The notes beneath the pieces were generated by a model. It saw nothing but the letters and a program-made list of their open reading frames with translations, was not told where the DNA came from and did not search any database. Source: Vitrella brassicaformis CCMP3155 (taxonomy: Eukaryota > Protista > Chromerida). From it: 64,000 nt of DNA. Position 1 is the stretch's first letter. Every line of letters begins with the position of its first letter. The translations under genes and the position numbers were made by a program. The DNA lies in NCBI GenBank assembly GCA_001179505.1, contig CDMY01000791.1, positions 1 through 64,000 on the forward strand, in the 5' to 3' direction. This document shows positions 135 to 50,965 of this stretch, piece after piece.

Positions 135-587
135 CCATCAGATCGCTCCATGCATACATGAAGAGAACAGACACATAGCACCTCAGATGTTCCCCGTCCT
201 CCGTGGTGTGAGAGTCGTCACATACCAGACGCCCCCAGACACCCATAGCATAATACCTACTGAGGAGAAGAAAAAGACCAACCAGCCACCAGGACGCGGC
301 TGAACGGAGGGAGGGAAGAGAGGGCGCAGCTACTCAGTCGGTCATGCAGCATGCAGAATGACATGTATATAAGACAGACATACTCGTTGGCCCAACCAAC
401 AACAGCCAAACACACAGGGAGCCATGAGACGGGCCACAAGCAAGCAGAGACGAGCTACTCTGTGAACGGAACACGGCAGATCAGATCAGATCAGTAGGAC
501 GTCATGTGGCTAATCTCTCTCTCCCCCACCCGCCCATCGTTCGGCTGACTGACACTCAGACAGGCTCACATCGACATAGACAATGCG

Positions 588-1085
588 CTAATGATAGCAA
601 GTGCAGTCGCAGGGATGGATGTGATCCTCAAAGGGACGTTCAATGGGGTGATGGTCACACTTACAGTCACAACCCGTATGCCAGCGACCATGACACTCAC
701 ACGGACAGTTGTAGGTACGGCTGTGAAAGTAGTCACAAAATCCCGGCAACCCCCCACCGCACCAACAATCACAGCCATCCTCATGGGAGTGATTGAGGTT
801 GGGTAACACGTTCAACTTTAGAGCCCTCAGTTCCAGACTGTCACCACCCTCCTGCACACACACAGGACAGACACGACAGACACACACATACCCACACAAG
901 GGAGCGACAGGCGGACAGACGCATCCACATCCATCCATGTGACAGAGAGCAGCACAGGCCCATGCATTCCTTACCATCGACGGATCAGTGACGGCCGCGG
1001 CCTCCTGCAGCTTGCGCAGGGGTGTTGCGGCGCACAGAGCACCGGCCATCAGGAGGGCACCAACCAGGCACAGAGGCACCTTCAT
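588..1085 (-). CDS. Small secreted His/Cys-rich protein (family member A), about 124 aa, 2 exons (1085-975, 851-588)
   Basis: Exon 1 MKVPLCLVGALLMAGALCAATPLRKLQEAAAVTDPSM has a signal peptide and RKLQE. A phase-0 GT..AG intron follows. Exon 2 is EGGDSLELRALKLN...HSHEDGCDCWCGGGLPG...CPCEC...CDCKC...HPCDCTCYH, ending in TAG. It is paralogous to 49138-49716. Confidence 0.85.
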   Translation of the reverse strand: MKVPLCLVGALLMAGALCAATPLRKLQEAAAVTDPSMVRNAWACAALCHMDGCGCVCPPVAPLCGYVCVCRVCPVCVQEGGDSLELRALKLNVLPNLNHSHEDGCDCWCGGGLPGFCDYFHSRTYNCPCECHGRWHTGCDCKCDHHPIERPFEDHIHPCDCTCYH

Positions 1086-1363
1086 CGCGGGAGAACAGGC
1101 GAGAAAAGGACAAGGGAAAACAAACTGAGAAGGAAGGAAGGCGGAATGAAGAGTGGAGCTGGGACCTATTGGGATCTGTCCCTCTTCCCATTTCCCACTG
1201 GGAACGGGACACCCAACGTCCGAAACCGAAGGCACACCCAAACGCATGCTCCGTCCAAAATGGGCAATGGGAAGTTCCCAGCTCAGATTCTTCATTCCGC
1301 CTTCCTTCCTTCTCAGTTTGTTTTCCCTTGTCCTTTTCTCGCCTGTTCTCCCGCGATGAAGGT
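1078..1363. repeat. Inverted repeat spanning the divergent promoter: 75-bp identical arms at 1078-1152 and 1289-1363, 136-bp spacer
   Basis: The reverse complement of 1078-1152 equals 1289-1363 (tcttcattccgccttccttcc...gttctcccgcgATGAAGGT). Weaker similarity extends through both first exons (975-1478). Confidence 0.9.
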
Positions 1364-4227
1364 CCTTCTGTGCCTGTTTGGTGCCCTCCTGGTGGCCGGT
1401 GCTCTGTGCGCTGATGACGTGAAGCACCCATCCTCCCTGCGCAAGCTGAGTCCTCAGGGCGTCGCTGATCCGTCGACGGTAAGGACATGCAACATGGCCA
1501 CAACTTGCTCATGCTGCCTCTGCGTCACCGTGGGTTTGCATGCGTCTGTTTATCCGTCGGTCCCTATGTGTGTGTGTGTGTGTGTGTGTATGCATGCAGC
1601 AGGGTGATGAAGCTCCTGTGAGGGCGCTGCATGGACCTCACCGCGACCACGATGATGACCATCACCACGACCATGACTACACCGACCGCGTGGCCCTCGG
1701 TTTCGTCATGACCACCATCGCCGGTAGGTACGCACGTGTGTCGATATGACGCAGATGCCTGATGTGGCGCCGGTCACTCGCTGTTGATGTGCTGTTGTGC
1801 GCGTGCAGGTTTGTCCACTGCTGTGGGCAGTGCGCTCTCCTTCTGCCTTCCCAAGCACAATGGCAAGGTACGTGTGCTGCACGTGTGTTTGAATCCGCAC
1901 GTACTCCGCGATGAATACATGTATGTCTATATCCGCGTGCGGACGCATGCCCACATTATCGGTGTCTGCAGATGCTTGCGGTGTTGTGCATGTCTCTGTC
2001 TGCGGGCGTCATGCTCTACGTGTCGTTCGGGGAGATCCTCAGCAAAAGCATCGTACGATCGATCGACATGCACGCACACGCACTCCCAACAAACAGCGCG
2101 TGCGTGTTTGTACATAAATGCACATTTTGAATGTATTGTGCAATGAATAGGACGAGTTTCGTGAGGCGATTAGCGACGGGGGGGAGGCGTACGCCAACGC
2201 TACGCTGTGCTTTTTCGGCGGTACGCTCACACGCATCCACATGTGGCCACACAAACATACACCTGCACACAAAACAAACAACATACCTACGTGTGCATCA
2301 ATCGACAGGTATCCTTGCGGCGATGCTGCTCGATTACGCCCTGGATTCCATGTTCAAAGTACTTGAAGCCAACACTCACTCCATGGACACACAATGACAT
2401 GCACAAACATCGAATGATGCCGTGACGCGTGTGCTTGCAGTGGAGCCAGACCGAGCCCGAGGCGCCCAGCAACAGCAGCCCAGTGCCCGACACATCGCCC
2501 GATGTACGAAGTGCATAGAACACAGACAGACAGACAGACAGACACGATATGACATGCCACACATAACGATTGGCTGACGTGCATGTACACATATGTGGCT
2601 GCAGAGTGGGGCAGACCGACAGCAGCTTCAAGAGGAACATAACGACACTGAGCATGGTGCGCACACAACAACCAACATCACAACCTGTGTTCGTGTACGT
2701 GAACCCATGGATATGGGCGGATGGATGGATGGAATGGTGGCAGGCGGCCGCGGTGGAGGCCCTCTCGCGCGAGAAAAAGTACTGTGTGGAGAGACACTAG
2801 CTGTGGTGGGTGCGCACACCACATACAACACACGAAGAGACACGCATATGTACGCCCTACATGCGTGTACACGGACGTGCCTCTCTGTATGATGTCCGCA
2901 CACACATGTCATGGATGTACACAGGTGATTGAGCAGTCTCTCTGCGGCGATGATAAGACCAGGACGCCGCCAACCGACGGTGAGGGCGCGTCATTCATAC
3001 GTCCGTTCACACACTCACCCGGACACGTGCATGCGAGTCGATCAACAAATACGCACGTGGTGTGTGTGTGTGTGTGTGTGTACAGATGCTGGGATTCTGG
3101 ACCAGGAGAACAGCACATCAGAAGAGAACATAAAGGAGGTCCGTCCGTCCGTACACCTGACGTGCCGGCCACGTACATACATGTGCGCATGTCATCTGTA
3201 TGTGTTTTTGATTCATTCATACAGCCTCAGAAGGGTTCGTTGGAGAAGCAGCGGGCTGACAAAGCGGCCCTCAAAAACCTCGGGATATTCAGGTACGCAC
3301 ATGGGAACGAGACGCCGACACTGCAATATCGGTTCGGTTTATCACCGATCGACCAGCGGTCTTGCACTAGCCATGCACAACTTCCCCGAAGGTTTGGCCA
3401 CGTTCGCTGCGACACTGGCGGATCCAACCTTCGGACTCGGTACGTGCCACACTCTCGCATCGCACACACGCCAAGGATTTACATTTATTGGTGTGTGCGC
3501 ACAGGGGTGGCCGTTGCCATCGCCATCCACAATATTCCCGAGGGAATTGCCGTCAGGTATACACGAATACGCGACTGACACGCACAGATGGCTCCACGGA
3601 CGGGCACTCTGCTGCCATTGTGTACATTTGATCAGTGTGCCGATCTTCTACGCAACGGGCAGCAAGTGGAAGGCATTCGGTACGTCCGCACACACATGCA
3701 CACGTACAAATTTTATGCTTCTTGTGTGGGTGTGTGGTGTACAGGCTGGTCGCTGCTCAGTGGCATTGCCGAGCCAGTTGGGGCTCTACTAGGTCAGTGA
3801 GTCAAGTGATTGCATCCATCCATTTGTCTGTCCACGCGCTCTCACACATGAATGCCACTCAGGCTACCTGGTGCTGATTCACGTGATGTCGCCCACTGCA
3901 TTCGCCATTCTGTTCGGTACGTCTGTCTGCATGTTTGTGTATGCACCCGTGTGTGCCCACATGCACGCAGTGTTCTTGTGTCTCGATGGGGCTTGGCTTG
4001 CAGGTTTGGTGGGCGGTATCATGATTCATATATGCATCAAGAAGCTGATACCCACCGCACTCAAATACGACCCACAAGTACGCCATCCACACACAGATCC
4101 ATCCTTCCTTCCTCCCATCAACACACGTGTGTGCGTGCGTGGTGTTTAGGATCGTGTGACGTCCAACACGTGTCTGCTGGGCATGGCCGTCATGGCGCTT
4201 TCACTCGTGCTGTTCCAAGTCGTCTGA
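1356..4227 (+). CDS. ZIP-family (ZupT/GufA-like) divalent metal transporter with signal peptide and His-rich N-terminal ectodomain, about 19 exons
   Basis: Spliced reconstruction gives [134 protein letters not shown] and GMAVMALSLVLFQVV, ending in TGA at 4225-4227. HNFPEG/HNIPEG are the canonical ZIP TM4/TM5 motifs. Loop exons at 2441-3290 are less certain. Confidence 0.9.
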
Positions 4228-5849
4228 CTGATTGCTTCTGTATGTGTGAGACGTCAGACGTTCTTCGTACGATTTTAGGCCATGATCTGTCCCTCCATTC
4301 ACACGACAGTGATCCTGACTCTCGAAGTAGTTCGTGCCTCTGTGCGCTTCTTTTTCGGTTTGTCATGTGCGTGTGGGGGGTCCTGGGTGCCTTGGCAGCC
4401 GTCGGTGCCTGTCAGTCATTCGTGTGACGACTTATCTGATCTGCGTGTGACGACTGACTGCACACACCCTGATGAGTGTGCCTGTGCGTGACTGCATGTG
4501 TACGATTCCATGAGGGAAAGAGAGATACACGTTTTTGTGCGTCTGCACACGCGAGGTCGACAGATACCACATGCAAACAAATAAACAAAAGAGCGTTTCG
4601 AGTCTACGTCGTTTGAAGAAGTGGAGTTCAAGCACAGGAACGTCAAGAAGGGAGGGACGGGGGGAGATGAGTCGTCACATCCATCGGAGGGTACACACAC
4701 GGGATGGACACATGAGCTGTGGGATGGGGGGAGACAGAGACACCGACCTGACACTCAAACATATCGAAGTGAATGATCCAATAACGTTTGAGTCCATCTA
4801 TCTATCCATCTGTCGACTTACCCCTCAACATTGATACTGACTCGATCAAGCTTCAGCATCACCGGATCAGCACGACAGTTTTAAGAGGAATGCCCGTCAA
4901 CTGTCATCCATCTGCACATTTCGTTTTCATTTAATTAATGATCCATTGATGTTCGGGCGTCTCCTCATCGTGTCTGTGTGTGTCTCTGTCTACCCATCCC
5001 AACCCCATGTGTCTGTCTAGCCCCCACATAGCAGTCCGTACACTCTGCGCGTGTGACCACGGCTGCTGAGTGACGGCCAGTGTGTGTATGTGCCTGTACG
5101 TACAACATACAAACGCAACCATTGATCAATCACAAAAATGTCTGCCATAGCTATCTGGTGCCAGTGGTCGCGGCGGAGGTTGTGCAGGGTGGGGGAGCGA
5201 CACACTCTTGACCACTCTGTGGTGATCAGATAGACAAGGGCGGAGATGAAGGCAGCTGCGGCTGTGCACCACGTGGCCGATAGCCATATAAAACATACAT
5301 CAAATTTGTGACTCAGGGTGGGGTTTCGCGTATTATATGCCCAAGGTAGCCGTCTTACGTGATTAGCGTTTGGAGCAAGGCGATGAATGGACTGTTGATT
5401 CAGGAGTCGCGAAAACGGACTGACAGGCAGGAAGGTTCATTCAATGAGCATCTCGCTAATAACGAGGCATCTGAGCAGCCACTGACAAACGGCATCATAC
5501 GGCATCACCAAGTCATGACACACACAACCATCCATACCGACTCTCACTGAGGACACGACACACCACACCGCAGACAGAAACTCGTATACCTTTGGTTGGC
5601 CACAGTGAGTGAGTGAGCGAGCGAATGATTCGGTGAGTGAGTGAGCAAGCAGCACCACACTACACTCCTACACCCCACGCAGTTAGCACCATCCATCCAT
5701 CCATCCAGAACACCTCTCGAGAGACCTTCGTCCATCGTGGCCATAGGCACAGCCAGCATTCATCCACGACAACGCAAACAAAAAGAGAGAGAGTTAGGGA
5801 GGGAGGGACGGAGGGAGGGAGTTTCCTGTCTGTCTGGCTGCCTAGGTGG

Positions 5850-9663: not shown

Positions 9664-10006
9664 CCCCCTCTTCTGTCTTCGCGAAAGCAACTGGGCAACG
9701 TGTGCCTGACGAAAGCATACAACACCTGCTGCTCGGTCCTCTTGAAGCCCAGCTGACAAGTGCCCCCTTCCTTGTCATTCAGGCTGGCTGCCACCATCAG
9801 CCATTGATGAGCCTTGCTGAGATCAGAGAGGACTGCCACACAGTGTGCATCATCGTGCAGTGCACTTTGCAATGCTACAATCATCCTCGTCTTTGTTTTT
9901 GTCTTTCTTGCCCAGGTACTTCATACATACGTGTGCCCATTCAGGTCAGTCAAAGGCTCATAGCGACGCTTCAGCAAGCCTTAGTTCAGTGCAAACGTTT
10001 TGTGTA

Positions 10007-13000
10007 TCAGTCTGTTGGTGTGGGATTCCACCCTGCTGGCTTGTTCTGAAGGTATGTACTCACCAGCCTCCTGTGTTTGTCCGTTGTCAGTGGTTTTGTG
10101 AAGATATCAGCAATGTTCAGTTCTGTTCTGACATGCGAGGCCTTCACTTCGCCTTTGCAGACCATGGTCCTCACATTGTGGTAGGCAGAGCGTATCGCCT
10201 TTGTCTTGTCATTGACGACATAGTTGCTTGCTGTGTGTCTTGCGCTGTCAGCGTCTGTGCGAATGTGTACGCTCGCAACGTGCCCAAACTCACTCGCTAG
10301 TCCGCATATGTGCACCAATTCGTCACAGCATCGACTCATCTCAACGTATTCAGCATCATGTGTGCTTCCTGTGACACAGCGCTGGTTTTTGCATCGCCAT
10401 GTGACCGGATTGCCATTGAGGAATATGATGTATCCACCTGTCGATTTGCCATTCTCTTGATCGAGATGGCTGGCATCGGTCATTGCGAGGAGGTGCAGAT
10501 CATCATGTTGGTCTTTGCGGAAAGTGATGCCTTGTTGTTTTGTGCCTTCCAGGTACTTGAGTATGTGCTTGACGGCATTCCAGTGTGCTGGCCCTGGATT
10601 TTGGCTGTGCATTGCGACTTCTTTCGTCGCATACGCAATGTCGGGTCTCAAGCATTGTCGACAGATACATCAGATTGCCAACTGCATTTCGGTAAGGTAC
10701 GTTGGTCATCGCAGCTTTTTCTCTGTCTGTCCTTGGCTGCATGGAGCTCCTGAGTTTGATGCTTGTTCTGGCAGGTGTGTCAGTCGCATTGGCTTGATCG
10801 ATGTGGTATTTTGAGAGTATCTGACTGACATACTCACTCTGCGACAGGTTCAGTGTGCCAGCGACCATGTCTCGCCATTCCGATGAAGCGCTTTGCGAAA
10901 CCAAGGTCTTTGATTTCAAACTTCTCTTTCATTATTGCTTTGAACCAACTTGCCGATTCATCGTGCCCTTTTGCAGGTGCATAGAGGATGTCATCGACAA
11001 TCACGCCAACCCAGAGTTGCTTCTCGTCATGGAAGTAGAGACAGGGATCAACCTTTGATCGACGGAAGCCGTGTTCTGTCAGGTGTTTGTGCAGCGTGTC
11101 ATTCCATGCTCTTGGCGCTTCTTTGAGTCCATACAGGGCTTTCTTGAGGCGAATGCATTTGCCTGGTCGCTCGTAGCCCTTTGGACATTCCATGTATATC
11201 TCGTTGTCGAGCGGTGAGTATAGGAAGGCCGTGTTGACGTCCATCTGATAGATGTCTCTGTCTTGTTTGTTCGCCATGGCCAGGAAAACTTTGACCGCTG
11301 CCTGAGACATAACAGGAGAGAAAGTTTCGCCAACGTCAAAGGGGTCTTGTGCGAATCCTGATCACGAGTCGCGATTTGAACCGTCCATCCGATTTGATGC
11401 GGTACACCCATTTGTTGGGCATGATTTGCTTTCTGACCGTCTCGATATCAACGAATTCGAATACATCCAGGTCTGCCATCGATTGCATTTCTTTGTCCAT
11501 CGATAATCGCCAACGTGGGTCTCTCTGTGCCTGCCCGTAGGTCTGTGGTTCGTCTTTTTCTGCACAGGCACCGCAATAGATGGCGTCTTCGAGCAATTCG
11601 TCGAACATTTGTTCGTCTTGTTCGGTAGGAAAGAATTCCTTGCGCAATGCATCGAAGAACGAGTTGTCTTCTGGTTGTGTGTCCTCCATGTATTCTTCAG
11701 TGCATGTTGCTGCTATTCGCGTGTCTCTGTGTGTCGTCTTTGCTGTGGGTATACGACCGACTCTCGGTTCGTCAGTTTGGAAGTGTTTCTTGCAGACATC
11801 ACAGATGTGGTTGCTGTGAGGTTGCCACAAATCGATGGTCCACGTGCCCTTGCGTACGAATCGCTTGTCGTTTTCTGACTCGAAGTGGATCGATCGGCAA
11901 TGAGGACAAATGATATCGGTAACGTAGAATTGATCAACGTTGAACGCATTTCTTGTCGCTTCGTTTGTCGTTGCGTATGTTTGTGTCTCTGCTTCATTCG
12001 GATCATCGACGACTGATAGTGCCCAATAGTCTTGGAATCGACTTGGGTATTTCTTCTCGCGTGTGGATCGGCGCAAAACAGGTATTGGCGCATTGTCTGG
12101 CATTGGCACTGCATCGCCGCCATGTATGTGCGCTCCATTGTGACCATTTGCGTTGTTCTCACCCCCTCCAATCAGGTTGTTCGTTGGGTCAACATCCATC
12201 TGATCGTTGTCTTCCTGCATGGATTGATCATCGTCACCCATCGCATCATTCTCTTCCTCTTCTTCCTCGTCTGACGAGTCGGAAGGGAAGGCGTCCGGTG
12301 GTGGAATCGGTTTGATCGGTACGCCCACTTGAGGCATCAACTCATCGTTGTCGACAGATGTTCCTTTGCTTTGACAGCCAATGTCGTCGAGTGTGAGTTG
12401 TTGTGATGGATGTAGGAACTCATGTTCGAAGAAACGGACGTCATTGCTGACAATGATGCGCCAACCTTGCGTCTTGTGTTTGACGCGTATGATATATCCA
12501 TTCTTCATATTCGGGTGGTACCCAACGAAGATGCCTCTCACTCCTGGTCCTGACAACTTGCTGATGCGTTGGCTCTTCGGTAGGTAGACAACTGCTTTGC
12601 ATCCAAACACACGAAGATGACTGAGGTCGGGCTTCTGTTTGTATCTCATTTGGAATGGTGTCTTCTGCTGGGGATTGGCCCTTGTGGGCAGCCGATTGTG
12701 TAGGTACACTGCGGTGTCGATTGCATATTGCCAATAGGCGAGCGGCAAGTTCGCATGTGCCATCATGGCTGTGCCCATTTCTCTGAGAGTCCGATTCATC
12801 CTCTCGGCTTTGCCATTTTGACGGGGATCGCGAGGTGCTGAGATCTCATGTTTTATGTTGTGTCTCGCCAGCTGACTGACGACTTTACACCAATTAGCTC
12901 TCCTCCGCCGTCTGTGCGTATGATTTCAGGTACGCCGACCGTGTTGAGGAACGATTCCAGCGCTTTTGGAGCGTCTGATTTCTTGTGGAGGAAGGCAAGG

Positions 13001-15956
13001 TACGTGTAGTTTGTGTACTCATCGACGAATGTCATGAAGTACTTCTTCCTCTGCTGGACGCTTTCAGGAAAGGGCTCTCCACATATATCTGAGTGGATGC
13101 GACCCAGCCATTTGATGGCTCTATTGGCAGTATCATCGTCTTTGTCTTTCCGAGCTCCGTGTGGCCGCTTGGTTATCTTTGCGATTGCACAATCCTCGCA
13201 GTCACACTTATGTATCGGAAACCGCAGTTTGCCTTGCAGTGTTTTCTCGAAGTTGCAAAAGCACCGAGTCAAACGCATTACGGACTTTGCGCTGCGATGC
13301 GCAGTTCTGTAATGAGCAAGCCAGTATGCCGCATTCTGACTGCTCGACCGGACTTCTGTCGGTTTCGACAGGAATGCACTGGGAATATCACCATCACATG
13401 TCTCCATTGTGTGTGGCTCCTTGTCCACTTGTAGGTTATCTTGTGGATCGAACGACATTGTGTGATGTCCCGAATGCTGCCCACGACCAAGACATTTCCG
13501 TTTGGCATCCGATGCATCAGTTGGTGGGTGGAATGAAGGTAGCTGTGCATCCATGCATTCGTTTCTGTTGAATCTGCCTGTCCCTTGACTCTTTACGTCA
13601 GCTGTGCCCTGTTTGTTTGTCTTCCTGCGTTTCGGTCCGTGTGTCTCAGATGCACCCAGCCGATCATGCGTATTGCACCAGTGTGTGTGCGCATGGGATT
13701 CTTGTTGGCTTGTATATGTTCGTATCAACTCATCCCAGCACTCATCATTCGCTCTTTGATCGTAGTAGTCTTGTAGGTCTTTGTCGGTCAAATTCCCTCC
13801 GACTGGCTCAAAATCAATTATATATAGGTCCTTTTTGGACTCAGCAACATAGGTCCTATTCGGACTTAGAATCAAACATTTCTCATCGTCAAATACTGCC
13901 TTGCAACCCAGTTTGGTGAGTGCTTTGACTCCCATGAGGTTGACTCGAAACTGCGGGACTAGTAGCGAATTGGGTAGTAGCACGTGATGCCCCTGCAGTC
14001 TGACTCGGGCCGTTCCCGTTGCTGTTACTGGGAGGATGTGTCCACTGGCCACCATGAGTCTGGGGGGTATTCTTGACCGAATCCAACCTGCAGAAACACT
14101 CAACAGAGTTGAAGATGATACCATGCAACCAGAGTCAATCAGTGCTTCGTGCGGTCGCAACACGGAGCTGACTAAGTCAACCAACTCTATGGTGACTAGA
14201 CACTGGCTGAATGAGCTTGTCTCTGGCTCAATCAGGGGCTCAACAGGAAGTTTCGTCCAGTTGAGTGGGTAAGATTCATCTGAGATGTAACCTCTCTCTG
14301 TGACAGATTCGTGTGTCTTGTCTGCAACTCTCATCGCCAGCCTTGCTTTTGCTGTGTTTGCTTCTGTTCTTTTGGCTGTTGCAGCTGTCGCAGCTACCAG
14401 GGCAAGTAAGTTGAAGAGAAGCAGCAAGTACAGGCAGATGACTTCAAGTATGCTTGCTGTACTGCCTGCTGCTTTCTTCCCTGTTCTGTCTATGCAGCCC
14501 TGAGACATGGTAGCTATCCGGCCTTGCTTGCTGTTGCTCTCATGCAACTTACGTACCGTGGGCATGCCGTACTGTACGGTCATGGCGTTGAAACCTCTTC
14601 CTCTTCCTCTTCCGCGACCTCGGCTGCGAGGAAGAGAAGCAGCAAGTACAGGCAGATGACTTCAAGTATGCTTGCTGTACTGCCTGCTGCTTTCTTCCCT
14701 GTTCTGTCTATGCAGCCCTGAGACATGGTAGCTATCCGGCCTCGCTTGCTGTTGCTCTCATGCAACTTACGTACCGTGGGCATGCCGTACTGTACGGTCA
14801 TGGCGTTGAAACCTCATCCTCTTCCTCTTCCGCGACCTCGGCCGCGACCTCTGCCTCCTCGACTGTAACCGCGACCGCGTCCTCTCTGGACGTCGTCAGT
14901 GATTCCGAGTGCTTGTTGTTCCTGTCTCATTGCAATCTGTATTGAGTCAAAGTGCTGTCCATTGTCATTCAGGCCACTTTGCTGTCTTATGTGTACCTGG
15001 ACCGGACAGCACCACCAGCCTTTCCTGTGGCCGTATCGCCCACGGTCGAAGCAGTATCCTTGGAAGTTTCGCTTTTGGCTCGGTCCTTCCTGCTGGTACT
15101 CACCCTGACTGCCAAACGTGGTACTCGGCTAGCCACCAAGTGTGCTGTTCGGTTGACTGCCACCGTATGCATTGCTGGGTTGGCTGCCGCCGTACATACT
15201 GCTCGGTTGGCTGCCGCCGTACATGTTGTTGGGCTGGCCGAGCTGCATTTTCTTCATGTAGGTGTTGCCACCATTGCCGAACACCGACGCGCCCGCAAGA
15301 CCGAAGGCCTCGCTCGTTTTGTTGTTCTGCGAGGCTTCCCAGCGGATGACTTGTTGGCGTACTGCACCAAACGTCGCAGGTGGGTGTAGGGCAAGGTCTT
15401 GGTACAGAGTGAAGTATTGGAGGCCGGCCTGCTGCAGGGCCTGTTGGAATCTTAGGATCTTGTCCTATTCCTTGAGCTCCCCTCTATCTCCACTAGCTTG
15501 TTTTGACGACTCGTTCGCCTGATCCACAACCCGATCGAGGTATTCCATATTCCTGCCAAGTGGCAGATCTTTTCTGATCGTGAAGTCGTCGAATTGTCGC
15601 CGTGTGTCGGTGGAGATCGCCTCGATCTGCTGTTGGTATTTGGCTTTGCACGCCCACCACATGGGCAGCCCGTCGCCTCTGCCCTCGTTTTCGTCGTCAG
15701 CCGTTTGGCACGCCATCATTATCGCGGAACACTTGCCGAAAGTGCGGCTGAGGGCTTGTGCGAAGATGTTCCCCTTCTTCTTCTCGGCCGGAGTCAAGTT
15801 ATTTCAGTCCTTGTCGCGCTCCTCCTCCTTGAGAAGTGCCGTGAGGTTCTCGCCCTGATAGTTGATGAGGGCATTCTTCAGCTGGAACTCATGTTGGTTG
15901 AAGAGCGTGATGCTGCTATCGAAGACGGGTATGTAGTCGGACTTGTGCGCTGCCAT
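10007..15956 (-). pseudogene. Disrupted gag-pol of the copia element
   Basis: Split over ORFs 15465-15797, 12853-14583, 11336-12799, 10834-11310 and 10007-10651 by in-frame stops and frameshifts. Contains a degenerate zinc knuckle, RG-rich and YGGSQP repeats in gag, and a 218-bp tandem duplication near 14413-14842. Confidence 0.88.
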
Positions 15957-29597: not shown

Positions 29598-30349
29598 CTA
29601 CTCTCCGTCGCCAGCCGCGGCCCCCCCACCCCCAGGCCCCCTCTCTCCCCCTTCCTCCCCATCCGCCCCTCCATGCAGCTGTGCCTCCGCCCCGCTGCCA
29701 CCACCAGCGGCGGCAGCGTTGAGCAGCCACACGCGTACCGTCTTGTCGTGGGAGGCCGAGAAGAGGAACCCGTTGAACGCACACAGAGACGACACCGCAC
29801 CCTGATAGATAGACAGACAGAGTGAGTGATACACAGACAGACAGACAGATTGGCTGGCATGGACAGATTTCCATGTCTGTCTGTCTGTTTAGTTTATTTC
29901 TCTGTGTGTGTGTCTGACGGTGTGTCCCTGCAGGTCGCCCTTGTGCCGCAGGTTGTAGTCCCATACCTGCAATGCCATGGCATTGATTGGGTATGTTCGT
30001 TCGGTTGAGTGAGTCAAGTCAGAGAGAGACACATTGTCTCTCCACTCGACTCACTCACCTTCACGGTAGTGTCCTTGGAACCCGAGAAGAGCAGCCGCTC
30101 GGCAGGCGCTGCGACCAGGCTCTGCAGACAGGACCCATATCCACACATACATGGAAAACACCACGCAAAGCGGTGGTGGTGGTGGTGGTGGTGTGTGTGA
30201 GAGTATACGTACGAAGATCCAGTCGTCGTGTGCGTGCAGCATGTGCGAGGACGCCTGCAGGTCAGCCGTCTCCCACGACTGCAGACCAGACAGACAGACA
30301 GACAGACAGACAGATGCGCACATTTCTCTCCCCCGTCCCTCTCTCTCTT

Positions 30350-30381
<32 letters not shown>

Positions 30382-31467
30382 TGAGTGCCTTGATAGATTT
30401 GTCTCTGCTGGCGGAGAAGAACCTCTGCCCCTCATCGATGACCGCAAAGGCCGTCACGCTGTCGTAGTGGGGCGGGTGGAGCGTACGCACACTGCCCCAG
30501 GAGCTAGTCGTCCACACCTGCACACACACACAAGGACACAGAGCCCTTCTATAGATAGGGCTGGGTGGGGTGAAAAGNNNNNNNNNNNNNNNNNNNNNNN
30601 NNNNNNNNNNNNNNNNNNNNNNNNNNNNNNNNNNNNNNNNNNNNNNNNNNNNNNNNNNNNNNNNNNNNNNNNNNNNNNNNNNNNNNNNNNNNNNNNNNNN
30701 NNNNNNNNNNNNNNNNNNNNNNNNNNNNNNNNNNNNNNNNNNNNNNNNNNNNNNNNNNNNNNNNNNNNNNNNNNNNNNNNNNNNNNNNNNNNNNNNNNNN
30801 NNNNNNNNNNNNNNNNNNNNNNNNNNNNNNNNNNNNNNNNNNNNNNNNNNNNNNNNNNNNNNNNNNNNNNNNNNNNNCGTACCGTCTTGTCGTGGGAGGC
30901 CGAGAAGAGGAACCCGTTGAACGCACACAGAGACGACACCGCACCCTGATAGATAGACAGAGTGAGTGATACACAGACAGACAGACAGATTGGCTGGCAT
31001 GGACAGATTGGCATGTCTGTCTGTCTGTCTGTTTAGTTTAATTCTCTGTGTGTGTGTCTGACGGTGTGTCCCTGCAGGTCGCCCTTGTGCCGCAGGTTGT
31101 AGTCCCATACCTGCAATGCCATGGCATTGATTGGGTATGTTCGTTCGGTTGAGTGAGTCAAGTCAGAGAGAGACACATTGTCTCTCCACTCGACTCACTC
31201 ACCTTCACGGTAGTGTCCTTGGAACCCGAGAAGAGCAGCCGCTCGGCAGGCGCTGCGACCAGGCTCTGCAGACAGGACCCATATCCACACATACATGGAA
31301 AACACCACGCAAAGCGGTGGTGGTGGTGGTGTGTGTGTGAGAGTATACGTACGAAGATCCAGTCGTCGTGTGCGTGCAGCATGTGCGAGGACGCCTGCAG
31401 GTCAGCCGTCTCCCACGACTGCAGACCAGACAGACAGACAGACAGATGCGCACATTTCTCTCCCCCG

Positions 31468-33087: not shown

Positions 33088-33905
33088 CTACTCTCCGTCG
33101 CCAGCCGCGGCCCCCCCACCCCCAGGCCCCCTCTCTCCCCCTTCCTCCCCATCCGCCCCTCCATGCAGCTGTGCCTCCGCCCCGCTNNNNNNNNNNNNNN
33201 NNNNNNNNNNNNNNNNNNNNNNNNNNNNNNNNNNNNNNNNNNNNNNNNNNNNNNNNNNNNNNNNNNNNNNNNNNNNNNNNNNNNNNNNNNNNNNNNNNNN
33301 NNNNNNNNNNNNNNNNNNNNNNNNNNNNNNNNNNNNNNNNNNNNNNNNNNNNNNNNNNNNNNNNNNNNNNNNNNNNNNNNNNNNNNNNNNNNNNNNNNNN
33401 NNNNNNNNNNNNNNNNNNNNNNNNNNNNNNNNNNNNNNNNNNNNNNNNNNNNNNNNNNNNNNNNNNNNNNNNNNNNNNNNNNNNNNCCTGCAGGTCGCCC
33501 TTGTGCCGCAGGTTGTAGTCCCATACCTGCAATGCCATGGCATTGATTGGGTATGTTCGTTCGGTTGAGTGAGTCAAGTCAGAGAGAGACACATTGTCTC
33601 TCCACTCGACTCACTCACCTTCACGGTAGTGTCCTTGGAACCCGAGAAGAGCAGCCGCTCGGCAGGCGCTGCGACCAGGCTCTGCAGACAGGACCCATAT
33701 CCACACATACATGGAAAACACCACGCAAAGCGGTGGTGGTGGTGGTGTGTGTGTGAGAGTATACGTACGAAGATCCAGTCGTCGTGTGCGTGCAGCATGT
33801 GCGAGGACGCCTGCAGGTCAGCCGTCTCCCACGACTGCAGACCAGACAGACAGACAGACAGACAGACAGATGCGCACATTTCTCTCCCCCGTCCCTCTCT
33901 CTCTT

Positions 33906-46464: not shown

Positions 46465-47532
46465 ATGAAGCTGTTTCTGTGCCTTGTCGGCGCCCTCCTG
46501 GTGGCCGGTGCTGCTGCTGACGTGAAGCACCCACCCTCCCTGCGCAAGCTGCAGGAGTCTACGGCCGTCACTGATCCGTCGACCGTAAGAAATTCACGGC
46601 CACCCACCTGTGGTCTCTCTGCACTATGCATGTGCACGCATTTGTCTGTCTGTCTGTCTGTCGCTGCTTCGTGTGTGTCTGTCATGTGTTTGCAGGAGGT
46701 GACTGTCCCCGAGGAGCCTGAGATCCCTCCTGAGGACTCCGAAGGTGGCGACGAAGATGACGACGATCTTGAGGTGGGTGCGGGAGCACTCAGCCACACA
46801 CACACATACTTAGCGCTCGCAGACCAGCCATGTGCCTGTGTGCGGGTGTTTGTTTGTCTGAGTACAGGAAGGTGATGACGCCTTTACCCCAAAGGTGGGC
46901 GAACAGCACTTTGCACATAACACATACAGACTGTGAACGTCTGTCTGTCTGTATCGATGTGTGTATCATGTACTACGTGTGCAGGAGGGTGACGGCGAGG
47001 AGCGGAGGGCGCTGGGGACCTGGTGCGGGCACCACTGTCACCACCCCTGGTGGTGGTACCATCATCACCACCCCTGGTGGTGGCACCCTCACCATCACGG
47101 CCACCATGGACACCACCACCACGACCATGGACACCACCGGATGCTCTCCGAGGTGGGCAAGCGAACAACATAACACATATAGACAGCGGCACTCACGCCA
47201 GACACAGAACCATGTACGTACGTATGTCTGTCTGTCCGTCTGTCTGTCTGTCTATCTGCATGGCTGTGTGTGCAGGAGGGTGATGAACCTCCTGTGAGAG
47301 AGCTGCATCCCCACTATCACTGTCACTGGGTCTGGTCGTGCCACCGGATGCTCTCCGCAGAGGTGGACGAACACGACACCACACACACAGGCAGCGACCC
47401 TCACCCCAGACACAGAGCCTTGCACGTCTGTCTGTCTGCCTGCGTGTGTGTGTGCAGGAGGCTGCTGAAGTTCCTGTAAGAGAGCTGCATCCCCACCCTC
47501 ACTGTCACTGGGTCTGGTCGTGCCACCGCTGA
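46465..47532 (+). CDS. Secreted multi-module His/Trp/Cys-rich peptide precursor (family member C), about 184 aa, 6 exons
   Basis: Exons 46465-46584, 46696-46773, 46868-46894, 46985-47152, 47276-47362 and 47458-47532 are all phase 0 with canonical GT/AG. Same leader as members A, D and the ZIP gene. Confidence 0.82.
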
Positions 47533-47612: not shown

Positions 47613-48375
47613 GTGACTGCTGGCTGGGCTGTGGGTGTGGGAGAGTGAGATTAGCCACATGACGTCTGAGATGGCTTGCGTCCCTACTGATGTGTCTGTC
47701 ACACAGTAGCTCGTCTCTGCCTGCCTGTGGCTCGTCTCATGGCTCCCTGTGTGTCTGGCTGGTGTTGGTTGGGCGAGAGTATGTCTTTATGCGTTTTATG
47801 TGTTTTATGTGTACCCGTATGAATGCCCCCCCCCATCCATCCATCCAGCCGCGGCCTGTTGGCTGGTCAATCTCTTTCTGCAATGTTATTGAAGATGTTT
47901 CTTCAATGCACATAGTGTAGTGCATGAAAGATTCGTGTCACTCGTGGACTGGTCGGTGCCTGGGTTTTTGTTTTTGCTTTTGCCTTTTTTGTTTGTGTTT
48001 ATTTTTTTGGTGTGTGGGAGCCAGGGTGTATGGAGGCGCTCTCAGCACCAGTCGGTGTGTGGCAGTCGTTTATTCTTGAAGAGTGCTCGTTCATCGGGCT
48101 CTGATCTATATTTGTCACTCTGGCGGGCTCGGTGTATATGGGTGCATGTACTGCATGTGGGAGGTGGAGGGGCAGCCACAGAGAGGGGAGGGGAGGGAGG
48201 GGGAGATGAGTCGTCACAATCCATCTTGGGGGTACACACATGGATGGGATGGACACGGATGGGCTGGACAGAGACACCGACAAGACACTCAAACATATCA
48301 ACGCATCGAGTGGATGATCCATCGCGGCCATTCATCCATCCACCCACCATGGTCATGAACCCTCAACGAATGTCA
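47613..48375 (+). repeat. Direct repeat of about 760 bp, copy 1 (3' flank of member C); copy 2 at about 50196-50965
   Basis: gtgactgctggctgggctgtgggtgtgggagagtgagattagccacatgac... continues collinearly in both copies. Sub-blocks also occur at 376-525 (inverted), 49790-49930 and 4655-4790. Confidence 0.85.
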
Positions 48376-49137
48376 AACAGCCACATCCACCGACATCCAC
48401 CTACCTTTACACCTCACGCACTTAAAGAACGTCTTTGCGCACGAATGCTGTCTCACCATGACGATAGCCCGTGTCTCTGCCATGCCTGTGTATCTCTACG
48501 CACATGCACAAATACTGCACGACCGAGTGCACTTGATTTGTGCGTATACGTTTATTTCGTGGGTCTCTTGTCCAACCGATGCCTACGTGCATGTGTTAAG
48601 TCATTGAGCTACTTCATCCCGCCTCCACAGTGACCGTGTGAATGAGTCTGACTGACACTACGGATTGAAAGCGAGACAGAGACACGTGGTACGTCGGTCA
48701 GACGCATCCATCAGTGGATACACACCACATCGAGGAAGACAAACACTTCCTGCTCATAGACATACACATCGGCTCTACACATATGCGAGAAACAGCAACC
48801 TGATACGTCCGTGCCTTCGAGCACTCATCTGCACCATTAAAGGTCATCGCATCCTCTCTCTGACCCATCGCGACGTTCAGGCGCAGCTGCTATCGCAACT
48901 TCACGCTCTGGTGCCGTGGCTGTGCATGGAGTTAGTGACTAAGTCGCTAAACATATTATCGCGTTTCTGCTCACGTTCCCTCTTCTCGCCTGTCCCGGTC
49001 CAAACGGGTGGGAAGAGAGAGAGAGGACAGATTCCAGCTCCAGATTCGTCCGACTCGTTCCGCTCCAGATCTTCATTCCGCCTTCCTCCCTCAGGTGACT
49101 GTTGTCCTTTGTCGTTTCTCTCACTTGTTCTCCCCCG

Positions 49138-49716
49138 ATGAAGCCGCTTCTGTGCCTGGTTGGTGCCCTCCTGGTGGCCGGTGCTGCTGATGACGTGAAG
49201 CACCCATCCTCCCTGCGCAAGCTGCAGGAGTCGACGGTAAGCAATGCATGACCGCTTGCGCTGCTCTCTAGGCCGCTATGCATGTGCATTCGTGTGTCTG
49301 TCTGTCGCTGTCTTGTCATGTGTGTCTGTCTGCATGTGTCTGTGCAGGAGGGTGATGACGATCCTGAAGTGAGGGCTCTACAACCCGGCCACCACGACCA
49401 CCACCATCCCCCCCCAAGCATCAAACCCGGCCAACACGACCGCCACCATCACCCCCCAAGCATCAAACCCAAACCCGGCCACCACGACCACCACCATCCC
49501 CCCCCAAGAATCAACTTCCACTCCCATGAGGATGACTGTGATTGCTGGTGCGGTGGGGGGTTGCCGGGAAAAGATACCCACGGTAGCCAGCGCACCTACA
49601 ACTGTCCGTGCGAGTGTCGTCATCACTGGCGTATGGGTTGTGACTGCAAGTGTGGCCATCACCACCACGAGGGTCCTTACACCCTCTATCATCCCTGCGA
49701 CTGCACCTGCTACTAG
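49138..49716 (+). CDS. Small secreted His/Pro/Cys-rich protein (family member D), about 155 aa, 2 exons (49138-49236, 49348-49716)
   Basis: MKPLLCLVGALLVAGAADDVKHPSSLRKLQEST, a phase-0 intron, then EGDDDPEVRALQ, three imperfect PGHHDHHHPP repeats and the 12-Cys domain shared with member A. Confidence 0.85.
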
Positions 49717-50195
49717 TGTGTTGTGTACGTCGATGGCAGTCAGGCGATGTCAATCAGGCGTTGCCAGTCAGTCAGTCGAGCTATGGAGGGGAGAGAGAGA
49801 GATAAGCCACATGACGTCTGAGATCCTACTGATCTGATCTGATCTGATCTGATCTGCGGTGGTGTTCCATTCACACAAGTACCTCGTCTCTGTTTGCCTG
49901 TGGCTCGTTTTGTTGCTGTTTGTGTTTCTGGCTGTTGTTGATTGGGTCAAGGGTCATGTGTGTATGTGTATTTGTGTACACCTTATTTTGCCAGTGCCCC
50001 CCTCCCCTGGTGGCTGGCTGCTCTTTGCCTTCAATGTACATCGCCTGTTTCATGACGTATTTGTGTTGCGAAGTGGCAAGCGTCCGTATGGGTGCTTTGT
50101 CCACCGAGCTCTGATCTGATTTGCTGTGCATGACTGGCTGAGTGGATGTGCACATACATACCTGCATGTATTTCATGTGTTACGTATGTGAGTCA

Positions 50196-50965
50196 GTGAC
50201 TGCTGGCTGGGCTGTGGGTGTGGGAGAGTGAGATTAGCCACATGACCTCTGAGATAGCTTGCGTCCCTACTGATGTGTCTGTCACACAGTAGCTCGTCTC
50301 TGCCTGCTTGTGGCTCGTCTCATGGCTCCCTGTGTGTCTGGCTGGTGTTGGTTGGGAGAGAGTATGTCTTTTTGTGTTTTATGTGTACACATATGAATGC
50401 CCCCCCCGGTCCATCCATCCATCCATCCAGCCGCGGCCTCGTGGCTGGTCAATCTCTTTCTGCAATGTTATTGAAGATGTTTCTTCAATGCACATAGTGT
50501 AGTGCATGAAAGATTCGTGTCACTCATGGACTGGTCGGTGCCTGGTTTTTTGTTTTTGCTTTTGCCTTTTTTGTTTGTTTATTTTTTGGGGGTGTGAGAG
50601 CCAGGGTGTATGGAGGCGCTCTCAACACCCGTCGGTGTGTGTCAGTCGTTTATTTCTTGAAAAGTGCTCGTTCATCGGGCTCTGGTCTATATTTGTCACT
50701 CTGGCGGTCTCGGTGTATATAGTTTCATGTACTGCATGTGGGAGGGGGTGGGGCAGCCACGGACAGGGGAGGGGAGAGACGGGGGGAGATGAGTCGCCAC
50801 AATCCATCTGGGGTACACACATGGGATGGACACATGGATGGACACGCATGGGATGAGATAGACAGAGACACCGATGAGACACTCAAATGCATCGAGTGAA
50901 CGATCCATGTGGTCCACATGTATGCATCCATCTACCACGGTCATGAACATTCAACGAACGTCAAC
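50196..50965 (+). repeat. Direct repeat of about 760 bp, copy 2
   Basis: Collinear with 47613-48375. Confidence 0.85.

What the first reader, a model, noticed from the sequence alone, without database searches (positions are those of the whole stretch)
588..4227. Candidate zincophore-importer system: secreted His/Cys-rich protein divergently paired with a ZIP transporter
Seen: a 124-aa secreted His/Cys-rich protein (minus strand) and a ZupT-type ZIP transporter (plus strand) have start codons only 270 bp apart, share a promoter and share a homologous first exon. Two more secreted members lie at 46465-47532 and 49138-49716. Established: Candida albicans PRA1 (secreted zincophore) and ZRT1 (ZIP) are a divergently transcribed pair. 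Inference: this is an independently evolved scavenging system in an alveolate, in which secreted peptides bind Zn or another metal and the linked ZIP imports it. I do not recognise the secreted family as described.
Basis: partly seen in the sequence, partly recalled or inferred. Interest (0 to 1): 0.92.

Follow-up and report, generated by a model that had tools for sequence, protein, structure and literature searches.

The report
ZIP transporter sharing leader with secreted peptides
In the coral-associated alga Vitrella brassicaformis, a metal transporter gene has taken over the promoter region, signal-peptide exon and histidine-rich first module of a neighbouring family of small secreted His/Cys-rich proteins found only in this alga, which suggests, but does not show, a shared role in handling metals.

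Summary
The window is Vitrella brassicaformis CCMP3155 contig CDMY01000791.1:1-64000. A 124-aa secreted Cys/His-rich protein gene (g1, minus strand) and a 19-exon, 430-aa ZupT-type ZIP gene (ZIP1, plus strand) lie head to head with 270 nt between their ATGs. A 123-nt, 97% inverted repeat covers the 5'UTR (100% identical) and the signal-peptide codons of both genes. g1, ZIP1, g2 and g3 are all transcribed and spliced.

New here:
- The secreted family is an orphan. A profile of its 12-Cys domain finds only one further Vitrella protein among 1.84 billion representative proteins.
- The ZIP consists of a ZupT core plus a 68-aa N-terminal extension, which is the family's leader exon plus one His/Asp module.
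- A second, paralogous locus on contig CDMY01000844.1 has ZIP2 with the same extension, again head to head with a family gene. The scan's first readers had already noted this locus on another piece of the genome.
- I found nine leader copies: seven small genes and two ZIPs. None sits on an unrelated gene.

Against the zincophore reading:
- One family member has no ZIP nearby.
- ZIP2's partner looks decayed.
- Characterised eukaryotic ZupT-type relatives work in organelles.
- No data on metal regulation or metal binding exist.

Verdict: this is a real, unusual exon-capture locus. A metal-handling role is plausible, and the zincophore function is untested.

The parts
588..851 (-). g1 exon 2: pro-region (EGGD..LRAL) plus the 12/13-Cys domain with four CxCxC triplets, and the stop codon
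   Evidence: Gene model; RNA junction 850/974; domain alignments
300..587 (-). g1 3'UTR (at least to 300), homologous to the 3'UTRs of g2 and g3
   Evidence: A 693-nt RNA contig covers 300-850; blastn matches to 47633-47786, 49767-49963 and 50216-50369
975..1085 (-). g1 exon 1: leader, made of a signal peptide, LRKL(QE) and TDPS
1030..1152 (.). Left arm of the inverted repeat (g1 5'UTR plus signal-peptide codons)
   Evidence: 123 nt, 97% complementary; the 67-nt 5'UTR is 100% identical
1153..1288 (.). Centre of the palindrome and probable bidirectional promoter core. It contains a weaker inner inverted repeat (1184-1207 / 1251-1274) and the GGGACAGATCCC motif at 1171-1182
   Evidence: By analogy, the transcript L008 at the second locus starts on the same motif, 89 nt upstream of its ATG
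1289..1411 (.). Right arm of the inverted repeat (ZIP1 5'UTR plus signal-peptide codons)
   Evidence: an RNA contig covers 1289-1448 with 0 mismatches
1356..1478 (+). ZIP1 exon 1: the family's leader exon (41 codons, phase 0)
1600..1680 (+). His/Asp module of the family (QGDEAPVRAL followed by a His/Asp-rich stretch), fused in-frame within exon 2 to transmembrane helix 1
   Evidence: 96% identical in ZIP2; the ZupT profile begins only after it
1356..4227 (+). ZIP1 gene: 19 exons, 430 aa. Signal peptide plus 68-aa extension, ZupT core, and a 123-aa loop between TM3 and TM4
4647..4786 (.). About 135-nt element downstream of ZIP1 that also lies downstream of g2 and g3 and occurs at the second locus
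46465..47532 (+). g2: leader, an acidic exon, and three His/Trp/Cys-rich modules each preceded by EGD..R(A/E)L. Six phase-0 exons, 184 aa
49138..49716 (+). g3: leader, His/Pro-rich repeats and the 12-Cys domain, 155 aa (P0003)

Best explanation
SHOWN.
Vitrella brassicaformis has a lineage-restricted family of small secretory-pathway proteins. Each is built from one conserved leader exon followed by phase-0 exons. The leader carries a signal peptide, an invariant LRKL and TDPS. Each later module opens with an acidic EGD..(V/L)R(A/E)L motif and continues as a His-, His/Trp- or 12-Cys (4 x CxCxC) segment.

An inverted duplication of the 5' end of such a gene is fused in-frame to the first transmembrane helix of a ZupT-type ZIP. 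The duplicated piece comprises the proximal promoter, 5'UTR, leader exon, intron 1 and the first module. The ZIP therefore starts with a cleavable-looking signal peptide and a His/Asp-rich tail that must face the extracytoplasmic side.

The result is a head-to-head pair around a palindromic promoter of roughly 100 bp. The fused ZIP was later duplicated, giving ZIP1 here and ZIP2 on another contig. Both ZIPs are intact and under purifying selection. In this locus, gene conversion keeps the two 5'UTRs identical.

INFERRED (about 45%).
The mirrored promoters and 5'UTRs co-express the ZIP and the peptides, and the shared leader sends them along the same secretory route. The peptides are released by cleavage at the RxL sites. 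They bind divalent metal (Zn, possibly Ni, Co, Cu or Mn) in the same extracytoplasmic space that the ZIP's His/Asp tail faces, and so buffer or collect metal that the ZIP moves into the cytosol.

Whether that space is the cell exterior or wall (a zincophore-like arrangement) or the lumen of a storage organelle cannot be told from sequence.
For: - Gene models and splicing.
- ZIP identity: Pfam Zip 41.2 bits (cut-off 35.1) on a 59-aa piece; ZupT 99 bits on the same piece. Exons 4, 13, 18 and 19 map colinearly to ZupT profile positions 39-60, 128-153, 221-243 and 247-266 of 266. Residues 1 to about 68 are therefore an add-on. The nearest solved structure is BbZIP, 5tsa. Hydropathy shows a signal peptide plus seven clear TM peaks; helix 4, which carries HNFPEG, falls below the threshold.
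- Inverted repeat and mirror profile.
- Gene conversion: the g1 and ZIP1 5'UTRs are 100% identical, against 87% for ZIP1 versus ZIP2.
- Orphan family: one hit (E 3e-21) in 1.84 billion representatives, and it is from Vitrella.
- All 12 Cys are invariant in three paralogues at 61-68% identity, and 12 Cys are kept in a fourth member on L007.
- Second locus: ZIP2 is 81% identical in DNA over 3.1 kb including introns. Its leader is 95% and its module 96% identical in protein. It lies head to head with P0005, 287 bp from ATG to ATG.
- ZIP1 versus ZIP2: dN/dS is 0.05 for TM4-8 and 0.30 for TM1-3. The N-terminal extension differs at only 4 of 204 nt.
- His content: 8 His in the 68-aa extension against 2 His in the 123-aa cytosolic loop.
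- A transcript start 89 nt upstream of the ATG at the second locus implies divergent start sites about 100 bp apart.
Against: - There are no data on metal binding, metal-dependent expression, localisation or processing.
- In the oxidising secretory pathway the 12 Cys may form six disulfides rather than bind metal.
- CEM21844.1 lies with no ZIP within 10 kb.
- g2 and g3 are 45 kb from ZIP1.
- P0005, the partner of ZIP2, reads its module out of frame in its mRNA, so the pairing is not obligatory.
- The adjacency follows from the duplication mechanism itself.
- The exon 1/exon 2 junction of ZIP1 was not among the RNA junctions displayed. Use of the leader in the mature ZIP1 mRNA rests on frame, GT-AG boundaries and conservation in ZIP2.
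- My leader search of the proteome was limited to products of 85-271 aa.
Confidence: 0.55

Rival explanations
1. Strict zincophore-receptor system. The peptides are released into the medium, capture Zn, and dock back on the ZIP at the plasma membrane, as Pra1 does on Zrt1.
For: - Secreted His/Cys-rich proteins sit in a divergent pair with a ZIP, and the 5'UTRs are identical.
- The arrangement is kept at two paralogous loci.
- The ZIP's outward-facing tail is a module of the same family, which could allow metal-bridged contact.
- The fungal precedent is synteny, co-expression and docking of Pra1 and Zrt1 (PMC5751234).
Against: - There is no homology to Pra1/AspF2 or to the Zrt1 clade.
- Characterised eukaryotic ZupT-group members are organellar.
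- A diffusible protein scavenger is costly for a free-living marine alga.
- One family member is unlinked to any ZIP and one partner is decayed.
- No regulation or binding data exist.
Confidence: 0.2
2. The small proteins do something unrelated to metal supply. They could be disulfide-rich or His/Trp-rich defence peptides, wall proteins or signalling peptides made from RxL-processed precursors. In this reading the ZIP merely picked up a convenient signal peptide and tail from its neighbour, and the linkage is a by-product of local inverted duplication.
For: - Head-to-head pairs with mirrored leaders also occur between two small genes, with no ZIP involved (L007 13562 and 14008).
- A family member lies away from any ZIP.
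- g2 encodes His/Trp-rich peptides behind RxL sites, in a polyprotein layout.
- The protein-language-model neighbours of the Cys domain are small disulfide-rich peptides, but all scores are below noise level.
- RXL processing of secreted precursors is known in diatoms (PMC5647440 and PMC5525289, found).
Against: - The captured module is kept almost unchanged in two ZIP paralogues that are themselves under purifying selection.
- It places the His-rich segment exactly at the extracytoplasmic mouth of a metal transporter.
- His and Cys together make up 20-25% of the residues, which is typical of metal ligands.
Confidence: 0.22
3. The small genes are non-functional by-products: pseudogenes or annotation and assembly artefacts of a repeated leader.
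For: - g1 is not in the annotated proteome.
- P0005 appears frame-disrupted.
- A CDS-less copy resembling the 3'UTR lies at 50216-50369.
Against: - g1, g2 and g3 are spliced and expressed in two RNA runs.
- Their open frames are intact.
- All 12 Cys are conserved across paralogues at 50-68% identity.
- Independent DNA runs carry the locus.
Confidence: 0.03

Closest known systems
Fungal zincophore locus: Candida albicans PRA1/ZRT1 and Aspergillus fumigatus aspf2/zrfC
   Same: A secreted His/Cys-bearing protein gene and a ZIP gene are adjacent. In the fungi they are co-expressed under zinc limitation, and the ZIP acts as the docking site (PMC5751234).
   Different: - The components are not homologous. 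The small proteins have no Pra1/HRXXH domain, and the ZIP is ZupT-type rather than from the fungal Zrt1 clade.
- Here the two genes share a homologous 5'UTR, leader exon and first module through inverted duplication. I do not know of this being described for the fungal pair.
- Regulation and docking are untested here.
ZupT / GufA group of ZIP transporters (E. coli ZupT, BbZIP, yeast Zrt3, human ZIP11)
   Same: - The TM4 and TM5 motifs HNFPEG and HNIPEG are present.
- Matches run colinearly to the end of the ZupT profile.
- The nearest solved structure is BbZIP.
   Different: - It carries a 68-aa N-terminal signal peptide plus His/Asp tail that lies outside the ZupT profile.
- It has a 123-aa, His-poor loop between TM3 and TM4.
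- It has 19 exons.
- Characterised eukaryotic members act at the vacuole or Golgi, and ZupT has a broad metal range.
LIV-1-type ZIPs with a signal peptide and His-rich ectodomain (for example ZIP4); this comparison is from my own knowledge
   Same: A cleavable signal peptide followed by an extracytoplasmic His-rich N-terminal region in front of TM1.
   Different: It belongs to a different ZIP subfamily. Here the ectodomain is short, recently acquired, and homologous to free secreted peptides encoded next door.
RXL-processed secreted precursors of diatoms (silaffins, SAPs, Sin1) and PEXEL/TEXEL maturation in Apicomplexa
   Same: A signal peptide is followed by RxL motifs. The leader carries LRKL in all nine copies and RKLQE in five, and an acidic stretch plus R(A/E)L precedes nearly every module. 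g2 has a polyprotein layout (literature found).
   Different: Cleavage is not shown. The organism makes no silica. No export function is implied. The motif match is my reading, not the result of a test.
Metallothioneins and histatin-like His-rich peptides
   Same: Very high Cys and/or His content with CxC-type spacing.
   Different: These proteins have signal peptides and so enter the oxidising secretory pathway. They match no metallothionein Pfam family. The 4 x CxCxC layout within a domain of about 68 aa has no match in Pfam, NCBIfam or the PDB.

Membership tests
ZIP (Pfam PF02535), ZupT-type | Zip domain score above Pfam's gathering threshold | tested here: met
   The 59-aa stretch from exons 13-15 scores 41.2 bits against a cut-off of 35.1. 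The annotated paralogue ZIP2 carries PF02535.
ZIP (Pfam PF02535), ZupT-type | Metal-site motifs HNxPEG in both TM4 and TM5 | tested here: met
   HNFPEG in exon 13 and HNIPEG in exon 14 are read directly from the model.
ZIP (Pfam PF02535), ZupT-type | Full-length match to the ZupT equivalog NF003243 (cut-off 252 bits) | tested here: inconclusive
   Only exon pieces could be submitted. They score 99 bits (59 aa), 32, 20, 19.4 and 14.6 bits, and are colinear from profile position 39 to 266 of 266. A whole-protein score was not obtainable.
ZIP (Pfam PF02535), ZupT-type | Eight transmembrane helices with both termini on the extracytoplasmic side | tested here: inconclusive
   Hydropathy gives a signal peptide plus seven clear peaks. 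The amphipathic HNFPEG helix falls below the threshold. Topology was not tested.
Fungal zincophore system (Pra1/Zrt1) | The secreted partner is a Pra1/AspF2 homologue | tested here: not met
   g1, g2 and g3 pieces, P0002 and P0003 match no Pfam or NCBIfam family. The profile search finds only Vitrella proteins.
Fungal zincophore system (Pra1/Zrt1) | The ZIP belongs to the fungal Zrt1/ZrfC cluster | tested here: not met
   The best family is ZupT. PMC5751234 places ZupT, ZIP11 and Zrt3 in a different supercluster.
Fungal zincophore system (Pra1/Zrt1) | The two genes are adjacent and divergently arranged | tested here: met
   270 nt between the ATGs here and 287 bp at the second locus.
Fungal zincophore system (Pra1/Zrt1) | Co-induction under zinc limitation, zinc binding, and docking on the ZIP | not testable with these tools
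   Only two RNA runs from standard cultures were available, stored as contigs.
Metallothionein | Small cytosolic Cys-rich protein without a signal peptide that matches a metallothionein family | tested here: not met
   A hydrophobic N-terminal leader is present on all members. There is no Pfam match.
RxL-processed secretory precursors (diatom RXL / apicomplexan PEXEL-like) | A signal peptide followed by RxL motifs at module boundaries | tested here: met
   LRKL is present in nine of nine leaders, and R(A/E)L precedes nine of ten modules.
RxL-processed secretory precursors (diatom RXL / apicomplexan PEXEL-like) | Proteolytic cleavage at the RxL sites | not testable with these tools
   This needs N-terminal mapping of the mature peptides.

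The most novel reading that the evidence does not exclude
An alveolate metal-acquisition system that arose independently of the fungal zincophore locus. The transporter and its secreted metal-collecting peptides are paralogous at their N-termini. They share one promoter, 5'UTR, leader and module cassette that is spread by inverted duplication. That cassette co-expresses them, routes them together, and gives the ZIP a His/Asp tail that receives metal from, or bridges through metal to, the free peptides.
Probability: 0.2. Interest if true: 0.85.

Novelty: new variant of a known kind. Interest (0 to 1): 0.62.

Why it matters
If the functional link holds, this would be the first protein-based metal scavenger plus ZIP pair outside fungi. 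It would sit in a photosynthetic relative of apicomplexan parasites and would have arisen in a way that can be followed base by base. That would make testable the question of how eukaryotic algae get trace metals from sea water or coral tissue.

Even without the functional link, the locus is a clean natural example of exon capture by inverted duplication. A prokaryote-like ZupT core gained a signal peptide and a metal-ligand tail in one step, together with a bidirectional promoter whose two arms are kept identical by gene conversion. It also defines an orphan 12-Cys (4 x CxCxC) domain and a candidate RxL-processed prepropeptide family in a chromerid. That is relevant to the origin of PEXEL/TEXEL-type maturation.

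Tried and rejected
- Word-indexed search with g1 exon 2: no candidates at all. g1 is not annotated, and the length filter excluded g3.
- AlphaFold2 on the three-sequence alignment of the Cys domain: mean pLDDT 46.7, pTM 0.25. This is unusable, so I ran no fold search. The ESM Atlas model of P0002 is equally poor, and the feature neighbours score 0.5-0.66, below noise level.
- PDB profile search with the Cys domain: nothing below E 0.5.
- Pfam and NCBIfam on the small proteins: nothing. UniRef's name for CEM21844.1, 'C2H2-type domain-containing', looks like a spurious pattern hit.
- Codon-degenerate leader pattern against JGI metagenome contigs, meant to fetch Vitrella transcripts including the spliced ZIP mRNA: only two unrelated hits.
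- Full-length ZIP searches were not possible. The exons encode 14-41 aa, references cannot span introns, and I did not type the 430-aa sequence. I therefore could not fetch ZIP orthologues from other alveolates to date the capture.
- Allelic copy versus paralogue for the second locus: I rejected 'allele' because DNA identity is only 81% over 3.1 kb and the partner gene differs.
- A recent whole-arm duplication as the source of the 97% repeat: rejected, because intron 1 and the distal part of exon 1 are only about 65-75% alike. A short gene-conversion tract or strong selection on the 5'UTR and signal peptide fits better.
- Plastid targeting of the leader: rejected by eye. The region after the signal peptide is acidic and does not look like a transit peptide.
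- Expression ratios from contig word depth: not interpretable.
Full report
**Identity of the DNA.** The annotated protein P0003 (155 aa) is encoded at record position 49138 of contig CDMY01000791.1 of Vitrella brassicaformis CCMP3155 (GCA_001179505.1). That is the same coordinate as g3 in the window, so the window is bases 1-64000 of that contig. The genes have many short GT-AG introns.

- On the minus strand, g1 has two exons (1085-975 and 851-588) that give a 124-aa protein. It has a hydrophobic signal peptide, a pro-region, and a C-terminal domain with 13 Cys and many His.
- Two RNA runs (X1, X2) contain contigs that join 850 to 974 and extend through a 3'UTR to at least position 300.
- On the plus strand I built a 19-exon model (1356...4227, 430 aa, every intron GT-AG) from the RNA junctions. 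At least 15 of the 18 junctions are listed. The exon 1/exon 2 junction was not among the rows displayed, although a contig covers the 5'UTR and leader exon (1289-1448) without a mismatch.
- The two ATGs are separated by 270 nt.
- The repeat finder reports an inverted repeat 1030-1152 / 1289-1411, 123 nt, 97% complementary. It covers 67 nt of 5'UTR and the first 56 nt of coding sequence of both genes.
- The leader occurs four times in the window (1085 minus, 1356 plus, 46465 plus, 49138 plus) and nowhere else. None is expected by chance.
One RNA contig joins g2 exons 4, 5 and 6.
- The intergenic stretch 48456-49019 has no RNA depth but normal DNA depth.

**The transporter.**
- A 59-aa stretch spanning exons 13-15 scores above Pfam's threshold for Zip (41.2 against 35.1 bits). 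It scores 99 bits against NCBIfam's ZupT equivalog. Its nearest solved relative is BbZIP.
- Single exons map colinearly on the ZupT profile: exon 4 to 39-60, exon 13 to 128-153, exon 18 to 221-243, and exon 19 to 247-266 of 266.
- Exon 4 starts at residue 103, so about 68 residues precede the ZupT core. These are the 41-codon leader exon and a 27-residue His/Asp module that runs, within exon 2, straight into TM1.
- Hydropathy shows the signal peptide and the expected helices.
- The long loop between TM3 and TM4, which is His-rich in many ZIPs, has only 2 His in 123 residues. The N-terminal extension has 8 His in 68.
- ZIP N-termini are extracytoplasmic (general knowledge), so a signal peptide followed by a His/Asp tail is topologically sensible.

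**The secreted family.**
- The Cys domain aligns between g1 and g3 at 68% identity. It has four CxCxC triplets.
- A profile of it, searched against 1.84 billion representative proteins, finds one protein (E 3e-21). This is CEM21844.1 of the same alga, 136 aa, with the same leader.
- All 12 Cys are invariant among the three.
- A fourth, more diverged member with 12 Cys lies on a third contig.
- Nothing matches in Pfam, NCBIfam or the PDB. AlphaFold2 and the Atlas give no usable model.
- All leaders contain LRKL, and five of nine read RKLQE. Nearly every following module opens with an acidic stretch and R(A/E)L. g2 looks like a polyprotein of three His/Trp/Cys-rich peptides.
- This is the layout of RxL-processed precursors known from diatoms and recalls PEXEL maturation (papers found). 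Cleavage itself is an inference.

**How the pair arose.**
- A mirror alignment around position 1220 shows homology from about 84 nt upstream of each ATG, through exon 1 and intron 1, into the first codons of exon 2.
- Identity is 100% over the 5'UTR, about 91% over the signal-peptide codons, and only about 65-75% in the rest of exon 1 and the intron.
- ZIP1's 5'UTR is identical to g1's but only 87% identical to that of its own paralogue ZIP2.
- The simplest reading is an old inverted duplication, followed by short-tract gene conversion between the arms or very strong selection on that segment.
- The family has many members with this 5' cassette, and the ZupT profile has no counterpart of it. 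I therefore infer that the ZIP was the recipient. Proof needs ZIP orthologues from other alveolates, which I could not fetch.

**A second locus.**
- Searching the proteome with the leader alone found two more proteins on contig CDMY01000844.1. That contig (L007) carries ZIP2, annotated with PF02535.
- ZIP2 is 81% identical to ZIP1 in DNA over 3.1 kb including introns, so it is a paralogue and not an allele. Its leader is 95% identical and its module 96% identical in protein.
- ZIP2 is again head to head with a leader-bearing gene, P0005, 287 bp from ATG to ATG, with mirrored arms of 82-93%.
- The MMETSP transcript of P0005 starts 89 nt upstream of its ATG, on a GGGCAGATCC motif that recurs upstream of g1, ZIP2 and g3. 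The divergent start sites are thus only about 100 bp apart, which makes this a compact bidirectional promoter.
- Between ZIP1 and ZIP2, dS is about 0.10-0.12 in the membrane core. dN/dS is 0.05 for TM4-8 and 0.30 for TM1-3. The N-terminal extension differs at only 4 of 204 nt. Both ZIPs are therefore maintained with the extension intact.
- The same contig also holds a head-to-head pair of two small family genes (ATGs at 13562 and 14008). Inverted duplication of the 5' cassette is thus a habit of this family and not something special to the ZIP.
- First readers of this scan had flagged this second locus on another piece of the genome. I reached it independently through the protein search.

**What speaks against a dedicated zincophore-importer pair.**
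- CEM21844.1 lies on a third contig among housekeeping genes, with no ZIP within 10 kb.
- g2 and g3 are 45 kb from ZIP1.
- The mRNA of P0005 reads its EGD..RAL module out of frame, so ZIP2's partner may be decaying.
- The linkage is a direct product of the duplication, so it is weak evidence for selection.
- The ZupT/ZIP11/Zrt3 group includes vacuolar and Golgi transporters in eukaryotes, and ZupT moves several metals (PMC5751234).
- Cys in the secretory pathway are usually oxidised (general knowledge).
- No expression data under metal stress are available. The two RNA runs are contigs from standard cultures of a slightly different strain.

**Conclusion.**
- The structural and evolutionary account is well supported: an orphan modular prepropeptide family, capture of its promoter, leader and module cassette by a ZupT-type ZIP, a bidirectional promoter, gene conversion, and later duplication.
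- The functional account is that the peptides and the ZIP's tail bind the same metal in the same extracytoplasmic compartment, with the ZIP importing it into the cytosol. It is the most likely single mechanism, but I put it at roughly 45%.
- The strict diffusible-zincophore version stands at about 20%. A function unrelated to metals, with only incidental linkage, stands at about 22%.
- Compared with the fungal PRA1/ZRT1 locus, the system-level logic may be the same. Neither component is homologous, and the sharing of an N-terminal cassette between the transporter and the secreted proteins is new.

**Context.** The rest of the window holds a Ty1/copia-type retroelement, an aldo-keto reductase, a methyltransferase, and WD40, PPR and p24-family genes. 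None of them is metal-related.

Noticed in passing
window 10000-15000, minus strand: Long ORFs of a Ty1/copia-type retroelement: an integrase core at 12856-14583 and a retroviral SH3-like domain at 11339-12799. They coincide with a stretch of strongly negative AT skew and lower GC.
   Followed up: partly
window 4647-4786; 48188-48321; 50769-50907; L007 12230-12366: An element of about 135 nt recurs a few hundred bases downstream of ZIP1, g2 and g3, and also at the second locus. The ZIP is therefore flanked on its 3' side too by sequence typical of the small-gene family. Its nature is unknown.
   Followed up: partly
window 50216-50369: An extra copy of the family's 3'UTR-like sequence with no coding region in front of it. 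It is possibly the remnant of a further family gene downstream of g3.
   Followed up: no
L007 10001-11295 (contig CDMY01000844.1): P0005, the divergent partner of ZIP2, is transcribed (MMETSP transcript L008). Its Trp/Arg-rich EGD..RAL module lies in a different frame from the leader, because exon 3 is 61 nt long. It is either a decaying copy or a new ORF.
   Followed up: partly
L007 12938-13562 (minus) and 14008-14591 (plus): A head-to-head pair of two small family genes with mirrored leaders, 446 bp from ATG to ATG. The minus-strand gene is not in the annotation and carries a diverged 12-Cys domain whose first triplet is CxxCxC.
   Followed up: partly
window 1171-1182; L007 9912: The motif GGGACAGATCC(C) lies about 80-110 nt upstream of the ATG of g1, ZIP2, P0005 and g3. 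The assembled P0005 transcript begins exactly on it, so it is a candidate initiator or cis-element of the family.
   Followed up: partly
window 1604-2445: RNA runs X1 and X2 differ from the genome at several ZIP1 exon positions, for example two amino-acid changes at the start of exon 4. This indicates another strain or allele. X4, a DNA run, also carries many intron variants.
   Followed up: no
window 30087-30173, 31231-31317, 33647-33733: Three near-identical copies of a short coding-like segment within about 3.6 kb, next to a WD40-like ORF. This is a local tandem duplication.
   Followed up: no
window 588-1085: g1 is expressed and spliced but is absent from the annotated proteome of GCA_001179505.1 and from the 5.8-billion-cluster protein collection. 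Small family members can therefore be missed by proteome-based searches.
   Followed up: yes
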